A DNA stretch of 64,000 nt from Asterias rubens (lineage: Eukaryota), in the NCBI RefSeq assembly GCF_902459465.1, contig NC_047069.1, positions 20,088,001-20,152,000 on the forward strand, read 5' to 3'. The stretch's first letter is position 1. Every line of letters starts with the position of its first letter. The notes beneath the pieces were generated by a model, which saw nothing but the letters and a program-made list of their open reading frames with translations, did not search any database and had not been told where the DNA came from. The translations under genes and the position numbers were made by a program. This document shows, piece by piece, positions 28,068-64,000 of the stretch.

Positions 28068-28182
28068 TGGGGCATACAAACTGATATATTCTTTTTAATA
28101 ACCACATTTACATCGAAGTAAACTGATTCTCAATTAATATGCTTTATACTACCGAAAGTAATTTTGTACTGTCATTAGTGAA

Positions 28183-28548
28183 AGCCATTGGACACTTTCG
28201 GTAAACAGTATTGTCCAAAGGCCCACACTTCGTGTATCACAACTGATATAATAAATAACAAACCTGTCAAAATTTAGGCTCAATCGGTCATCGGAGTCGG
28301 GAGAAATAAACGGGGAAAACCCACCATTGTTTCCGCACGTTTCGCCGTATCATGACAGGTGTTTAAAATAAATCCGTAATTTTTCGCTATCGAGAATTGA
28401 TAATTGTTTTAATGTTTTCTCAAAAAGTAAAGTATTTTATGGAATAATATTTCAAGAGAAGTCTTTCACCATTACCTTCTGTAAACCCTGATAGGTTATT
28501 TGTAAATCCGTGAACTTTTTTGTTCTGTTCCGAAAGTGTCCAATGACT
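28183..28548 (+). mobile_element. Kolobok-type MITE family F
   Basis: TIR agccattggacactttcgg / ccgaaagtgtccaatgact; homologous to 47154-47519. Confidence 0.85.
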
Positions 28549-28589
28549 TTAAAGTGATTACTATTATGTATCTTTAATTATGAAACCAC

Positions 28590-29076
28590 CTACTATAGAG
28601 AGGGCTCGTTTTTTAACTCGAGTGAGATACAGTTCATCACTTGATGAACTGTATTTCTCTCGAGTTAAAAAACGAGCACTCTCTATAGTAGATGACCAGT
28701 TTCACCCAGCACATTCCCTCTTTCAGCCCATGCGGTCTAAGAATCGTTTTCGTTCAATTAAATCTGGATCCAACCGTACTTTGCAGAGTTTTTATCCCAC
28801 AGCTGTTCGTGTTCTAAATGACAGGTTTTAATCATGAATGTCTATTTTTGATTTTAATTCTTCCTTCGTACTATTTTTATCTTTCGTATTTCGCCTGTAT
28901 ATTGTAATACTTTTCAGAGTTGTTTATATTATATTTCCATGTATTTTTGTAAATGGTTAATTGTTAGTGTAATTTGTATACAACATAATATTTTTAGACA
29001 CGCAAAACCAAAACGAATTTCACTGTATTAATATTTTTATTTTTTTTTACAGGTGACAATAAAACATTATTCTATT
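28590..29076 (+). mobile_element. Rex1/Babar-clade LINE 3' end with 5' fold-back
   Basis: SLDELYFSRVKKRALSIVDDQFHPAHSLF...SFYPTAVRVLN resembles the Rex1 C-terminus; tail gacaataaaacattattctatt. Confidence 0.75.
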
Positions 29077-29583
29077 TTATATAACACCCAAGCAGATCCT
29101 TGCCATTTGATTGGAGGATTGTCCGTCACGTGATAGCAAATAAAAGTACCATTGCACGCTGAGTCACTCACCGTGCTTTTTCGTTCCATCCGAAAAGTAC
29201 CATTGCACGCTGGCACGCTGCCAGCGTGCAATGGTACTTTTCGGATGGAACGAAAAAGCTGAGTAAAACATCACTGCGTGCGCGTGTCTTTGGTAACGCA
29301 GCAGGTGTTACTGCAAGAAGGCATAGTAAAATTCGGCTTCTACAGTTGAAATTGTTTGTTTTGAAAGTTGTATCTTTCAATCAAAATTACAAAGTTCTAC
29401 TTGGATGTTATATAAAACAAATAATGAATGTTTTTCATTCGTGCAATGGTGCGAATATGTTCATTCGTTGAAAGCTGGAATGTTCCATTCAACTCGGCTC
29501 CGCCTCGTTGAATAGAACATTCCATCTTTCAACTCATGAACATATTCGCACCATTGCACTCATAAACATTCATTATGTGTATA
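29077..29583. mobile_element. Non-coding element with A..A'B..B' ends (Crypton-like, uncertain)
   Basis: See findings; long 3' palindrome centred on ctcggctccgcctcg. Confidence 0.7.
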
Positions 29584-29757
29584 CTATTCTATTCTATTCT
29601 AAGAGCTGCTGCAAGTGGTGGTGATACGTCTCTTTAAATCACGCTAAAATGCAGCGTTGATCATGTAGTCAGCTGTTCAATTCAGTATGATTTGTCCACA
29701 ATATGCACGTTATACAATAAATATAAGGGGCGACATGTTCAGGGGCGACATTGCAAT

Positions 29758-33485: not shown

Positions 33486-35758
33486 TTAAGGCCTAATTTG
33501 TATACAAACCAATAAGTGTTGTCTACAGATGCATATTCCATCCTGGCTGCTACACTTGTACACATCTTCATGTTTGCTGTGTTGTCACTTAGCAATCATT
33601 CTGCTAGTGTCGAAAGGTCAGGCCATTTAAACTATTGTATACATTTGGGCATGTATGCCATAGGTCCCTTTGATTGGTAAGCTAAGTCTAATTTCTCGCT
33701 TTGTTTTGATACATGTACGCTCTATCAACAGGAAAATGGTTTTATTGCATTATGCCTAAGAAATCAGCGATAGGTTGTTATTATTATGACATAATCATCA
33801 ATTTGTTAACATGGATTTTTTTTCTTCATGTGAATAATATTGGTAACGCTCCTGGGTGCATGTTGATTGTCTAGGGCTAAACAACGCAATGGACTCTCAG
33901 TGCGTGACGTCACAGCGATGCAATGTGCACAACAAAATGGCGCGCACAATAGGCCATCTATCAAGCGGACAAACAATAACACTATACAATATTTACGACA
34001 TTCATTGGATTTTGCGCCACAAACAAACATTTATGCCTCTGCCAAGAATACTGCCACGACCGTAAGTTCATGTAAAGGACACTGGTTAAAAATACATCAA
34101 TATTTCATTAAAATAATACAGGGGAAAACAAATCTTCATTTACGTCATTCAGTTAGCCTAACTGGACAGTTTTTAACTCTTTTTTCTTAGGACGGCTACT
34201 AAAATTCTGCTTTACAACTAGAAAATGTATACATTGACATTTAAATGCGACTTTCATAAACACAATTATGCAGCTAAACTTTGATTGCTTAAGGGCCTTG
34301 AAACGCAAATATACTTAGCATCGCTGACAAGAGTATACATTTGTTTTGAAAGGTGAGTAGTTTCGTCAACGATTCGTCCCTGTCCTTCTAAACATATACA
34401 CGATGAAAAATTAATGTGACTTGATAAACCGCAACTTATTGTCTGGTAAACTTTGCGATTACTTTACCATTGCTAACTTAAAATTGGCTATCGGTTATGA
34501 ATATTATATATATATATATTTTACAGATTTGTTTGTATACCTAATGAAAAAGAATGGATTTGTGTAACGGGGTCAGTTGGATCTTGACAGCTGTGTATAC
34601 TTGGATGTGAACTTCGTACCATGTCATTTTGATTGGTTGGCCACTCCACTACTAATGGCCACACTTAACAAAAACGCCTGCAAGCGAGAGAATCGTTTGC
34701 AAAGTGCACAAGACCCACGCAGCAAACAGGTTTCCTTTAATACTCGTTCTTTCCCCTCTTGTTTCTGTTAATAATCCTCATTAGTCCAGGGGTAAACTTC
34801 GTGTCCAATTTACAACACGAGTAAGATTGAGGATGTAAAGGACCTGGCACTTAGTTGATCGTGAATGTATAGGAGTCCCAAACCTCACCCCCTTCAAACC
34901 CGAGCCCTGGATACAGAGTGACGAATCGCTGAACACACTCATTGCTTCGAGTGTCATGCTTTGCTAGAGAGTGATCAATATCAAACCACACCAGGTTAAT
35001 ATTGGCCACTTCAGTAGCGAACGAGATTCTCCCGCCAAGAAATATAATGAACGTTTCCCGCCATTTATAACAAACTAGCGTTGAACTCAATTTGCTGTAA
35101 ACATTCAACGATACCCTTTTGGATGCAATCGTGTTATTGGATTTATTCGGGTGAAATCCATCAATTTGACAAGATTGGTATGTTTGATTTATAGCTGTGA
35201 TGGATGGATGGTCAGTTTAAGCTGAGGGTGCCGCGAAGGATGGACATTGCAGGGAGCAAGTTTAGGACAATAAATATTATTTTAATCCGGTTAAATCAAT
35301 GCTGTAAGATGAATTATATTTGTTGAGAACTTTTTAGAGAGAAAAGGCTTTGCATGAATGTTATTAACCGAAGGCACGTAGGCCCTACGTCTTCTTTTGT
35401 GTTGATGACCGTAAATGACAAGGCGTAAATATTAAGTTCAATCGTTACAATTTTTAGACGTACCTCCTAAGCCAATTTCACGCGAAAAGTATTTTTATGG
35501 TTCAAATTGAGTTAGTACTCTGGGAAAGTTATTATGTTCTTGTATATCTCAAAATATCACTAGAAATAAAGGCATCTTATTGGGAACACATCCGGCGCAC
35601 CTCAGCTCATCAAAATTGCTGTTTTTTATGGAATTTTTTTATAAAGTTTCCAGATAATAAGCAACACAATGCAAACCCATTTTCCACATTTCCTTTCACA
35701 CATAACAAGAACAAAACCGGAAACCTCAGCTAGTTTGTTGTTTATATCATAACACAGA

Positions 35759-36264
35759 TTATAACACCCCTTGCAAGTATTTGCCTGCTCATTGGTTTAG
35801 AGCGCGTCACATGACATGTCTTAGTTTTGCTAGACGACGGCCGTGTGATAGTGCGTCGGTTTGCCATGCGCTAGTCCGAAGACTAGCACACGGCGTGCAG
35901 CACCCAGACGTCCGTTGCGTGTACCAGGATAATAAATTAATAGTCTGTAACCATTTCGGATTGCACGACACTACATGCAGCACAGTAAAAGTGTTTGCAA
36001 TCTGTATTCGCGTCGTCCGTGGATTGTAGCATTCAGGTCTGTAACTTAATAATAATAGTACAGTATTTACAAATGTTTGGGGTGTTATAAAACAAATATT
36101 GACTGCTTTTACTCGTACAATGGTTAAAAACTATTACTCCCTCGGTGATCCCCGTAGCGTTCTATTTTTCCTCGGCTTCGCCTCGGGAAAATAGAACGCT
36201 CCCGGGGATCACCTCGGGAGTCATAGTTTTAACCATAGCACTCGAAGCAGTCAATATTCGTATA
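35759..36264. mobile_element. Non-coding element with A..A'B..B' ends (Crypton-like, uncertain)
   Basis: ttataacacccc / ggggtgttataa-AACAAA-tattgactgct / agcagtcaata; palindrome centred on ctcggcttcgcctcg. Confidence 0.7.
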
Positions 36265-36576
36265 CTGTCACATCCATCATCACAGCTGCACTACCTTTCC
36301 TTTGACAATTTTAAACAATCCCCTTTTTTATGAGAAAGTGCAATTATATAGGGCTCTAAAGTATAGGGTAGGATTTCTTCAGGTTGCAATTCAGCGCGCC
36401 TTTTTGTCAATTGCCTGCATTTATTATTCACGCGTGATCTCCCGCATTAACAAAATCCAACAATCGATAGCCTACCTGTTAATGAACTGAGTGTCGACTG
36501 TCGAGTATAAGTTATAAGGAACATTACATAATTTACTGTTTTGCAAAATTATTGCTGGCGGTGAATATTTTTTTAA

Positions 36577-36994
36577 AGACACTGGACACCTTTGGAAATT
36601 TTCAAAGACCAGTCTTCTCACTTGGTGTATATCAACATATGCTATGCACAAAATAACAAACTTGTGAAATTTTGAATTCAATTGGTCGTCGAAGTTGCAA
36701 GATAATAATGGAAGAAAAAAAAACTTGTCACACAAAGTTGTGTGCTTTTAGATGCTTGATTTCGAGACCTTAAAATAAAGTTTGGGGGTCTCGAAATCAA
36801 ATTCTGAGGTCTCGCTCGAAATCAAATTCAAATATTTGGGTGGAAAATTATCTCGAAAATTACGTTACTTCAGAGGGAGCCGTTTTTCACAATGTGTTAT
36901 ACTATCACAGCTCTTCATTGTTTATTACCAAGAACGTTTTAATTCTAACAATTATTTTGTGAATTAAATTACCAATTTATAGTGTCCAGAGACT
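36577..36994 (+). mobile_element. Kolobok-type MITE family A
   Basis: TTAA+agacactggacacc; ends agtgtccagagact. Confidence 0.85.
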
Positions 36995-46992: not shown

Positions 46993-47153
46993 TTAAATTT
47001 ACTCATTCAAGAAGCTAAAAGAGTTATTTTAATCGAATGGATATATGGCTATTCAAATTAGAACAAATTTGACAGTTACTTAAATTGGAACAGTTACACA
47101 ATGAGACGTTATGCTGTCCAAAAAGACATTCTTTACCTGCAAGTTTGCTTTAA

Positions 47154-47519
47154 AGCCATTGGACCCTTTCGGTAAACAGTATTGTCCAAGTCCCACACTT
47201 CGTGTATCACAACTTATATATAAAATAACAATCCTGTGGAAATTTAGGCTCAATCGGACATCGGAGTCGGGAGAAAATAACGGGAAAACCAACTCCTGTT
47301 TTCGCGCGTTTCGCCGTGTCATGACATGTGTTTATAACAAATCCGTAATTCTCGTTAACGAGAATTTATATTGTTTTACCGTTTTCTCAAAAAGTAAAGC
47401 ATTTCATGGACTAATATTTCAAGAGAAGTCTTTCACCATTACCTTCTGTAAACCCTGTAAATTATTTGTAAATCTGTGAACTTTTTTTTTTTTTTCTGTA
47501 CCGAAAGGGTCCAATGGCT
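47154..47519 (+). mobile_element. Kolobok-type MITE family F, full length
   Basis: Perfect 21-bp TIR agccattggaccctttcggta; TTAA on both sides. Confidence 0.9.
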
Positions 47520-47758
47520 TTAAGGAAATATCGAGGTATTCGTAGGTCGTGTTACAATGAGTGGACTAACCGGCTGGTTTGAAATTGTTTTTTATAGTTC
47601 GCACGCAGGAGTAGAGAATGATCTCTGGTCGTGGAATGATTGCATCTGATGTTCAGAGAGAGACAATCAAATCATGCAATCTCTAATAGAAATAACAGAC
47701 CAGTGGAATCAGTGGTACCCTGATCCAGCCACTCCAAATACTACAGTATGAATATTAA

Positions 47759-62611: not shown

Positions 62612-64000
62612 TTAAAGACATTCGTATTTTATATCCTCGTCCAATATTATGCAAACATTGGATGCACATGAGTACAATGACGTAGAATGCAATCACGAGG
62701 TAAAATCTTGACCATTATTATCTACGACAATGAAAGAACGAAATGCATTCAACAATTTGTTTTATATAAGTCAGACCTAGCTCCTTGACATTTGAAGAAA
62801 ATAATATAAAATATAACAATATAAAAAAGACACAGAAACTAGCCCAGGCCACACTGAAGTGGGCGTTTCCCTTTTAACATGCAAACAGTCATGTTTGTAC
62901 ATGGATGGGTGGTCTCGTGCTCCTGACAAATTCGGTTTTGGTTTTAACTCACTACCAATTATCATTGGCAAATTTGCAATACATCAAATGAAAGCATAGT
63001 ATTGTCTACTCCATAAAACAGAATAATAATTAGCAAACCATTAATAGTGGTTATTTCACTTGAAAGGGTTGGTCTGTCAAATAAAGATCGGTATAGAATT
63101 CTATTGGGAAAGAGAGGTGATCGTGGCGCAATTATTTCGAGTCTAAAATAACCCCAGTGGTATATGACTATAGCTTGACACATTTTGTTGCAACATTAAA
63201 AGACAATCCGTTGGTCTATGAAGTATAGTTATGGATAGCATGCTGTAAAAAGAGTGAAATAGTCTTGCCAAAAAATACCCTACAGGTCTACTGGGATTAT
63301 TGCGTTATAGTGTGACATTTTGTTGCAACCTGAAAAGACAATCCGACAAAATTTTACTGTCATTGATGTACCTAAATGATCACCCATGACAGATGAGAGG
63401 GCTTGCATTGCTTCAATGAACACAATCACTTATTTTTTTTTTATAAACTGGGGATTTACAGAAAGCTTTTAGCGCAGTGCGTCAGTACATTTGGCAATTT
63501 GCTGAACACACATTTTGATCTATGAGTACAATGCATTTAAATGGATGCAGTTGCATAATTGCCAGGATGTATTTGAGAACCAATTTTAGCCGCATCATCG
63601 AGTTGTCGAGACTTCCACAGAATATAAACACGATTTACCTTCAGAGGGAATCGTGGGCTAAGGGAAAATGACAGTCACAATCAGTTTTTAGGACTAAAGA
63701 TAAACTCTCTAAGCAATAGCTCAATTTGCGCTTTGACGTGTTTAGCCGACCGTGAAGATAATTGTGGATTAGTAGTTCTCTTTAATGGCTTTGTTTCAAA
63801 TTGTGTATAAGGAATTTTGGTTTTATTTTTAGTGTGGAAATTTAATTCGAAGAACTCGCACATTTGGTAATTGTCAAAAACATTTTTTGAATGACCACAG
63901 CAGTCCAGATGGAAGATCTGTTAGTGGCCCTGGCACGTATCAAAAGTTAATAACATTTTAGAACAAGCCATAAGTGGGATTATGCAATCGTCAAGAAACT

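What the first reader, a model, noticed from the sequence alone, without database searches (positions are those of the whole stretch)
35759..36264. Same A..A'-AACAAA-B..B' architecture with different arms (copy 2)
Seen: A ttataacacccc (35759-35770); A' 36079-36090, then AACAAA (36091-36096), then B tattgactgct (36097-36107); B' 36246-36256 followed by ttcgtata; palindrome apex ctcggcttcgcctcg. The body and B arm differ from the 29077 element, but the spacer, apex, TATA boundaries, size (about 506 bp) and geometry are kept. Inference: the architecture rather than the sequence is under selection, so it probably reflects the mobilisation mechanism.
Basis: partly seen in the sequence, partly recalled or inferred. 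Interest (0 to 1): 0.7.

Follow-up and report, generated by a model that had tools for sequence, protein, structure and literature searches.

The report
Hairpin-ended rolling-circle transposon copy
This 506-bp stretch is a non-coding, very abundant jumping element of a sea-star genome whose end structure matches the known Helentron (Helitron-like) rolling-circle transposons, so it is a real mobile element of a known kind with an unusually long end hairpin.

Summary
A sister copy at about 29079-29584 has the same plan.

A related organism carries the empty site. Two independent contigs run from 35757 straight on to 36264, so the unit is exactly 506 bp (35759-36264, or one base to the left). It inserted as one piece, without target-site duplication. 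The same sequence is highly repeated in all four DNA runs examined.

The two copies are not related by architecture alone. They are homologous over their whole length (nhmmer E about 1e-12), and 8 of the 33 hairpin pairs that align in register changed on both sides.

The plan is a 12-nt repeat at the 5' end, its inverted copy inside, and a stem-loop a few bases later near the 3' end. This is the published signature of Helitron-like elements of group 2 (HLE2: Helentron, Helitron2, DINE-1, HINE).

The most likely mobiliser is therefore a Rep-helicase (HUH) transposase, not a tyrosine recombinase.

Three things are unusual or open:
- The hairpin is about 160 nt long, against stems of 7-11 nt in DINE-1.
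- The one testable target reads A^C (or G^A), not T^T.
- No autonomous partner could be searched for.

Notes of this scan describe the same kind of element elsewhere in this genome.

The parts
35759..36264 (+). Whole element, copy 2 (506 bp; boundaries may equally be 35758-36263 because of a 1-nt 'A' ambiguity)
   Evidence: Empty site in organism C: contigs run 35200-35757 then 36264-36626 with contiguous record positions (table 8, records 17 and 24). Summed depth rises about 4000-fold between 35770 and 36282 (table 2).
35759..35770 (+). 5' terminal inverted repeat (A, 5' subTIR/ATIR) TTATAACACCCC
   Evidence: 12/12 complementary to 36079-36090 (I6). The core TATAACACCC is shared with copy 1 at 29080-29089.
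35768..35777 (+). CCCTTGCAAG, containing the palindrome CTTGCAAG just inside the 5' repeat
   Evidence: Identical 10-mer to part of the DINE-1/Helentron-Da-40 subTIR ATACCCTTGCAAG. A match this long to any listed subTIR occurs in 0.09% of random 32-nt windows.
35805..35814 (+). Conserved block CGTCACATGA (copy 1 has CGTCACGTGA, with the palindrome TCACGTGA)
   Evidence: Conserved in the alignment of the two copies. Function unknown.
35840..35894 (+). Internal body hairpin (13-nt arms)
   Evidence: I7. Copy 1 has a perfect palindrome with 41-nt arms at a similar position (29175-29259, I2).
36079..36090 (+). Internal inverted copy of the 5' end (A', 3' subTIR/ATIR)
36091..36096 (+). Spacer AACAAA between A' and the hairpin; 4 of 6 bases can pair with the 3' tail
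   Evidence: Identical in both copies. Pairing with the tail was read from the sequence; in copy 1 the fold forms three such pairs.
36097..36256 (+). 3' terminal hairpin (B...B'), about 160 nt, apex CTCGGCTTCGCCTCG at 36171-36185
   Evidence: Family-majority letters at 36117 (G), 36135 (G) and 36169 (C), and a family-common 1-nt deletion at 36201 (about 35-45% of depth), improve pairing in the stem (tables 3 and 4).
36257..36264 (+). 3' tail TTCGTATA (copy 1: TGTGTATA)
   Evidence: The end is fixed by the empty site.
29079..29584 (+). Sister element, copy 1, with boundaries placed by homology to copy 2 (also 506 bp). A core 29080-29089, A' 29403-29412, AACAAA 29416-29421, hairpin 29422-29576, apex 29493-29507, tail 29577-29584
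   Evidence: No empty site is available, so the 5' boundary is uncertain by a few bases: the repeat extends to 29075 in the T-rich flank.

Best explanation
Copy 2, and its sister at 29079-29584, is a non-autonomous rolling-circle transposon of the Helitron-like group 2 (HLE2: Helentron/Helitron2; non-autonomous members are called HINE or DINE-1-like). Shown here: it is a discrete 506-bp insertion without target-site duplication. It is absent from the orthologous site of a related organism. It is non-coding and highly repeated. Inferred from the family: a Rep-helicase transposase encoded elsewhere (HUH nuclease with two tyrosines, fused to a Pif1-type helicase) nicks one strand at the 5' end and peels it off 5' to 3'. 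It stops at the 3' end, where the hairpin acts as terminator, and joins the two ends into a circle that is later pasted into a nicked target. In the displaced single strand, A pairs with A' and B with B'. The internal segment A'-AACAAA-B then acts as a splint that is complementary to the joined 3' and 5' ends and sets them side by side for cleavage and joining. That explains why this geometry is kept while the stem sequences drift with compensatory changes.
For: (1) The empty site gives exact ends and no TSD (table 8: X4 record 17 and X7 record 24; the filled junctions lie in X1 records 1 and 5). (2) There is a 12-nt repeat at the 5' end, its inverted copy inside, and a stem-loop 6 nt later near the 3' end. 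[quoted passage not shown] (3) Of the 33 hairpin pairs in register between the copies, 25 are identical, 8 changed on both sides and none on one side only. (4) Majority or common letters of the family improve pairing in this copy's stem (tables 3 and 4). (5) There is no ORF over 82 aa and no Rfam family at threshold. (6) Summed contig depth over the element is about 4000-7000 times that of the flanks in four runs of three organism labels (table 2). (7) The 5' end shares the 10-mer CCCTTGCAAG with a DINE-1/Helentron subTIR, and starts TATA..CCC as all DINE-1 do (empirical p about 0.001). (8) Helentron proteins and HINE-like repeats are already listed for echinoderms, including a bat star (PMC4067079 supplements). 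(9) In Helraiser the 3' hairpin is the terminator and the intermediates are circles with joined ends (abstracts of PMC4778049 and PMC5876387).
Against: No autonomous Rep-helicase element with these ends was seen, and none could be searched for because no eukaryotic genome collection is on hand. The only testable target reads ...ACAGA^CTGT... (or G^A), not the T^T usual for HLE2; T^T would need an extra substitution at the junction in organism C. The hairpin stem is about 70 bp, against 5-11 bp in described HINE and DINE-1 elements. The 5' inverted repeat that folds back on the 5' subTIR, described for Helitron2 and DINE-1, is not evident. Only two copies could be read. Compensatory changes in a DNA palindrome can also arise by templated repair between the arms rather than by selection.
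Confidence: 0.7

Rival explanations
1. A different or undescribed HUH-type single-strand element: IS200/IS605-like peel-and-paste, or parvovirus-like rolling-hairpin resolution. The long hairpin would be the protein's binding site and the ends would be chosen by base pairing with an internal guide.
For: There is no TSD. The hairpin is long and conserved, with an asymmetric GC-rich apex kept in both copies. An internal segment is complementary to both ends. The target is not T^T.
Against: No such transposase is known in animals. The 12-nt repeat plus adjacent stem-loop is already fully explained by HLE2. The 5' end resembles the DINE-1 subTIR. Both copies carry the apex in the same orientation, so this window shows no flip/flop.
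Confidence: 0.1
2. A non-autonomous derivative of a DIRS-like retroelement, or another element moved by a tyrosine recombinase. A'-AACAAA-B would be an 'internal complementary region' matching the joined ends of a circular intermediate.
For: The geometry (an internal segment complementary to both termini) is formally that of the DIRS1 internal complementary region (my own knowledge of DIRS1, not tested here). There is no TSD.
Against: There are no long inverted or split direct terminal repeats and no remnant of a reverse transcriptase or recombinase gene. The repeat length of 12 nt, the 5' T and the adjacent stem-loop fit HLE2 exactly. High-copy non-coding DIRS derivatives of 0.5 kb are not a described class, to my knowledge.
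Confidence: 0.05
3. A cut-and-paste MITE (35759-36090, perfect 12-bp terminal repeats) that merely lies next to, or has captured, an unrelated palindrome (36097-36256).
For: 35759-36090 taken alone looks like a 332-bp MITE with perfect terminal repeats. Transposon groups without TSD exist (Spy elements, my own knowledge).
Against: The empty site shows that repeat-bounded body and hairpin went in together as one 506-bp unit, with no TSD and no TA or other duplicated target. The same two-part unit recurs at 29079-29584. Both parts have similar family depth (table 2).
Confidence: 0.05

Closest known systems
Helentron-associated interspersed elements (HINE) and DINE-1 of Drosophila, mites, mosquitoes and oysters (PMC4067079, PMC2374699, PMC7492417)
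   Same: Non-coding and highly repeated. A 12-13-nt subterminal inverted repeat lies 0-2 nt from the 5' end, with an internal 3' copy followed a few nt later by a stem-loop. No TSD. Stems covary between lineages. The 5' end reads TATA..CCC(C)TTGCAAG, against DINE-1 TATACCCTTGCAA/G.
   Different: The stem-loop is about 160 nt (stem about 70 bp) instead of 5-11-bp stems. The 3' repeat lies 174 nt rather than about 20-60 nt from the 3' end. There is no microsatellite or central tandem repeat. The one testable target is not T^T. No partner was found.
Helitron2 / HLE2 autonomous elements (Bao and Jurka 2013, PMC3627910; HELIANO, PMC11417382)
   Same: Asymmetric terminal inverted repeats of 8-18 nt. 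The 3' one lies immediately upstream of the 3' hairpin. A 5' T under one boundary reading. The proposed role of ATIR pairing is to set the replication end point.
   Different: No Rep-helicase ORF (the element is non-autonomous). The 5' hairpin involving the 5' ATIR is not evident. The hairpin is much longer.
Canonical Helitron (HLE1, e.g. Helraiser; PMC4778049, PMC5876387)
   Same: No TSD. A 3' hairpin acts as terminator. Transposition copies the element through circles with joined ends (inferred for this element).
   Different: No 5' TC, no 3' CTRR and no A^T target. HLE1 has no terminal inverted repeats.
DIRS1-type internal complementary region
   Same: An internal segment is complementary to the two element ends as they would be joined in a circle.
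   Different: DIRS are 4-6-kb retroelements with long inverted terminal repeats and RT/YR genes. None of that is present here.

Membership tests
HLE2 (Helentron/Helitron2), non-autonomous HINE/DINE-1-like | Short (about 11-18 nt) inverted repeats: the 5' one 0-4 nt from the end, the 3' one internal | tested here: met
   12/12 repeat at 35759-35770 / 36079-36090, starting at element base 1 or 2. Copy 1 has 11/12, extendable to 34 nt at 82%.
HLE2 (Helentron/Helitron2), non-autonomous HINE/DINE-1-like | Stem-loop directly downstream of the 3' repeat, near the 3' end | tested here: met
   The hairpin starts 6 nt after A' and ends 8 nt before the 3' end. It is about 10 times longer than in described families.
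HLE2 (Helentron/Helitron2), non-autonomous HINE/DINE-1-like | No target-site duplication | tested here: met
   The empty allele in organism C is ...ACACAG(A)CTGTCAC..., and the filled allele adds 506 bp with only a 1-nt ambiguity (table 8).
HLE2 (Helentron/Helitron2), non-autonomous HINE/DINE-1-like | Insertion between T and T (a general preference) | tested here: not met
   Copy 2 reads A^C or G^A. T^T (element 35760-36265) would need one substitution at the junction in organism C. Copy 1 lies in a T-rich (TTCTA)n tract and is compatible with T^T, but it has no empty site. n = 1.
HLE2 (Helentron/Helitron2), non-autonomous HINE/DINE-1-like | Autonomous partner with a Rep-helicase (with or without endonuclease) gene and the same termini | not testable with these tools
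   No Rep-helicase ORF was seen among the six window ORFs of 150 aa or more. No eukaryotic genome collection can be searched. The metagenome scan gave only chance matches.
HLE2 (Helentron/Helitron2), non-autonomous HINE/DINE-1-like | 5' inverted repeat or hairpin that involves the 5' subTIR | tested here: inconclusive
   There is no partial copy of A' within 40 nt of A. There is only a small palindrome next to it: CTTGCAAG in copy 2 and CAAG-N6-CTTG in copy 1.
HLE2 (Helentron/Helitron2), non-autonomous HINE/DINE-1-like | High copy number, no coding capacity | tested here: met
   Depth over the element is thousands of times the flank depth in four runs, and 20-117 distinct contigs per run carry the family letter at each variable site listed. 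The longest ORF is 82 aa.
Canonical Helitron (HLE1) | 5' TC, 3' CTRR after a short hairpin, A^T target | tested here: not met
   The ends are (A)TTATAAC... and ...TTCGTAT(A). The target is A^C or G^A.
Cut-and-paste MITE (DDE transposase) | Inverted repeats at both extreme ends, flanked by a TSD | tested here: not met
   The 3' repeat lies 174 nt inside the element, and there is no TSD.
DIRS-like / tyrosine-recombinase elements | Long inverted or split direct terminal repeats, with RT and YR genes or their remnants | tested here: not met
   There are no long terminal repeats and no coding remnant. Only the geometry of an internal segment complementary to both ends is shared.
Replitron | Short direct terminal repeats; found in plants, algae and protists | tested here: not met
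   The termini are inverted, not direct. Family features are from PMC10288648.

The most novel reading that the evidence does not exclude
These elements may represent a separate echinoderm lineage of HUH-mobilised transposons. In it, the short Helentron terminator would be replaced by a roughly 160-nt hairpin with a conserved asymmetric apex (CTCGGCTYCGCCTCG). The ends would be defined by pairing with an internal splint (A'-AACAAA-B). The target would not be T^T, so end and target recognition would differ from all described Helitron-like groups.
Probability: 0.15. Interest if true: 0.55.

Novelty: new variant of a known kind. Interest (0 to 1): 0.33.

Why it matters
It turns an apparently puzzling 'architecture without sequence' into a recognisable class. 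That lets thousands of such repeats in this sea-star genome be annotated correctly, as Helitron-like elements rather than as MITEs or unknowns. The exact ends and the TSD-free empty site give a clean substrate definition for testing how group-2 Helitron-like transposases recognise their ends, which has not been studied biochemically as it has for Helraiser. The very long, covarying hairpin and the non-T^T target are the only features that could extend what is known. They need a genome-wide copy set before they count.

Tried and rejected
1. The metagenome scan for the A'-spacer-B 20-mer returned 74 loci. None has a downstream hairpin or the apex, and only one shows an upstream 10-mer inverted match, so all are chance matches.

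2. The viral-contig scan with a 33-base specific pattern found nothing.

3. A possible third copy on the minus strand near 62655-62790 gave weak nhmmer/blastn hits, and it contains TTATATAAAACAAAT followed by a weak palindrome. It has no matching 5' repeat, and its fold is only -13 kcal/mol. I rejected it as unproven.

4. A descriptor search of the window looked for any long hairpin preceded by a short repeat whose inverted copy lies upstream. It recovered only the two elements. An apparent third case (28181-28694) is a separate 372-bp MITE that happens to lie next to a fold-back; its other copy at 47152-47523 lacks the hairpin.

5. Rfam gave only sub-threshold matches to microRNA-precursor models, which is what any long hairpin gives.

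6. Pfam on the six ORFs of 150 aa or more found reverse transcriptase fragments and one GPCR, and no Rep or helicase.

7. Searching the scan's notes by sequence gave nothing.

8. The 1985 Tsp paper on sea-urchin elements is not held.

9. Replitrons were considered and rejected because they have direct terminal repeats and are not reported from animals.

Full report
**Observation**

- A, TTATAACACCCC, at 35759-35770.
- A', its perfect reverse complement, at 36079-36090 (I6).
- AACAAA at 36091-36096.
- B, TATTGACTGCT, at 36097-36107, and B' at 36246-36256.
- The tail TTCGTATA at 36257-36264.
- The apex CTCGGCTTCGCCTCG at 36171-36185.

The apex 15-mer, allowing Y at one position and two mismatches, occurs twice in 64 kb, once in each element, against 0.01 expected. 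Folded as single-stranded DNA, copy 2 has z = -9.7 and copy 1 has z = -22 against dinucleotide shuffles. Both minimum-energy structures contain the A:A' helix closing the body, followed by the long 3' hairpin.

**The unit is a discrete mobile insertion**

I laid Logan contigs of four public DNA runs on window:35200-36900.

In two runs of 'organism C', from different studies, one contig each aligns to 35200-35757 and continues without any intervening letter at 36264-36626 (table 8: X4 record 17, record positions 1858 to 1859; X7 record 24, positions 2239 to 2240). The flanks differ from the window by about 3%.

So an orthologous empty site exists, reading ...ACACAG(A)CTGTCAC... The insert is exactly 506 bp. 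Its boundaries are 35759-36264 or 35758-36263, because an A can be assigned to either side. There is no target-site duplication.

Organism A has both filled junctions (X1 records 1 and 5), though X1 may be the sample the assembly came from. Organism B has at least the 5' junction (X3 record 9).

Over 35770-36282 the summed contig depth is roughly 4000-7000 times that of the single-copy flanks in all four runs (table 2). Between 20 and 117 distinct contigs per run carry the family letter at each variable site listed (table 3). The tool warns that this is not a copy number, so I take it only as 'very many copies in all three organism labels'.

At 35901, 35925, 35931, 36070, 36117, 36135 and 36169 nearly all family contigs carry a letter different from copy 2. 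The changes at 36117 (A>G), 36135 (T>G) and 36169 (T>C) restore base pairs in the hairpin. A 1-nt deletion at 36201, seen in about 35-45% of family depth (table 4), also improves the stem. Copy 2 is therefore a slightly decayed copy (about 2%) of a master with a more perfect hairpin.

**Relation of the two copies**

In fact nhmmer aligns the two over positions 5-506 (E 1.5e-12 and 1.4e-10). The alignment shows these conserved blocks:
- TATAACACCC at the 5' end.
- CGTCAC(A/G)TGA.
- GTTATA(TA)AAACAAATA(T/A)TGA.
- TCGT(A/G)CAATGGT and its partner ACCAT(A/T)GCACTC.
- The apex, AATAGAAC, and the final GTATA.

With boundaries placed by homology, copy 1 (29079-29584) is also 506 bp.

Within the hairpin, 33 base pairs fall in the same alignment columns in both copies. 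Of these, 25 are identical, 8 differ on both sides and still pair, and none differs on one side only.

They are therefore two diverged subfamilies of one lineage. The ends are conserved in sequence and the stems are conserved in pairing. One caveat: both-sided changes in a DNA palindrome can also arise by copying between the arms.

**What it is**

The element has no ORF over 82 aa, no tandem repeats and no Rfam family at threshold.

Its plan is the one published for Helitron-like elements of group 2:
- Asymmetric terminal inverted repeats, with the 5' one 0-2 bp from the end and the 3' one upstream of the hairpin, their pairing proposed to set the replication end point (PMC3627910).
- The same in oyster Cg_HINE (PMC7492417).

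The 5' end of copy 2 reads TTATAACACCCCTTGCAAG. It shares the 10-mer CCCTTGCAAG with the subTIR of Helentron-Da-40 (ATACCCTTGCAAG), and like all DINE-1 it starts TATA..CCC. A match of 10 or more to any listed subTIR occurs in 0.09% of random 32-nt windows of this sequence. This is suggestive but post hoc.

Helentron proteins are listed for sea urchins and for the bat star, and the sea-urchin Tsp repeats are counted as DINE-1-like (PMC4067079 supplements). Notes of earlier follow-up agents of this scan say the genome is a sea star. I did not verify that myself.

**How it most likely works**

This part is inferred.

A Rep-helicase encoded elsewhere nicks the 5' end and unwinds the strand. It terminates at the 3' hairpin and joins the ends into a circle, as shown for Helraiser (PMC4778049 and PMC5876387). 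The circle is then pasted without duplication.

In the single strand, A:A' and B:B' form. The spacer AACAAA can pair with 4 of the first 6 bases of the 3' tail in both copies, as read from the sequence; the copy 1 fold forms three of these pairs. The segment A'-spacer-B is therefore the reverse complement of the joined 3' and 5' ends, apart from a few central bases. It would act as a splint holding the two ends side by side.

**What does not fit, or is open**

1. The only testable target is A^C or G^A, not T^T. A T^T reading (element 35760-36265) would require one substitution at the junction in organism C. Copy 1 sits in a (TTCTA)n tract and is compatible with T^T, but it has no empty site.
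2. The hairpin is about 160 nt, against 5-11-bp stems in described families, and A' lies 174 nt from the 3' end.
3. A 5' fold-back on the subTIR is not evident.
4. No autonomous partner could be sought. The window has no Rep or helicase ORF among its six ORFs of 150 aa or more, and no eukaryotic genome collection is available. My single metagenome scan returned only chance hits.

**Rivals**

- An undescribed HUH-type element: 0.10.
- A DIRS-like or tyrosine-recombinase derivative: 0.05. The geometry fits, but no long terminal repeats or gene remnants are present.
- A MITE plus an unrelated palindrome: 0.05. This is contradicted by the single 506-bp indel and by the repeat of the same two-part unit at 29 kb.

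**Verdict**

The element is real and well delimited. It most likely belongs to a known kind (HLE2/HINE), with an unusually long terminal hairpin. First-reader notes and one follow-up of this scan describe the same kind of element elsewhere in this genome. Those notes are leads, not evidence.

Noticed in passing
window:36568-36990: A second, still more abundant dispersed repeat starts about 300 bp downstream of the element. Its summed depth is about 20 times that of the hairpin element in all four runs. It is related to the 372-bp MITE-like repeat with 21-bp inverted ends at 28181-28552 and 47152-47523 (87.5% identical to each other).
   Followed up: partly
window:29175-29259: Copy 1 carries a perfect internal palindrome with 41-nt arms. 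It contains the motif ACCATTGCACG, which also sits in both arms of its 3' hairpin and once more at 29148. This looks like a repeated protein-binding word, or a duplication of part of the terminal hairpin into the body.
   Followed up: partly
window:35805-35814 and 29128-29137: A conserved block is shared by both copies: CGTCACGTGA in copy 1 (an E-box-like palindrome, CACGTG) and CGTCACATGA in copy 2. The difference is a CpG-to-CpA change. It may be a binding site, but this was not tested.
   Followed up: no
window:29756-29909: An imperfect palindrome (65-nt arms, 77% complementary) lies 170 bp downstream of copy 1. It is flanked by GGGGCGACAT-type short repeats. It appears to belong to a different repeat family.
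   Followed up: no
window:36129-36208: Some family members in three runs lack 78 nt of the inner hairpin (a joint skipping 36130-36207). This suggests that copies with shortened hairpins circulate or arise by palindrome deletion.
   Followed up: no
window:62655-62790 (minus strand): A weak look-alike of the A'-spacer-B segment (TTATATAAAACAAAT) is followed by a poor palindrome. It has no 5' partner repeat. It may be an old decayed relative or chance.
   Followed up: partly
window:57825-59003: An intact single-exon rhodopsin-family GPCR ORF of 392 aa (Pfam 7tm_1, E 3.9e-31).
   Followed up: no
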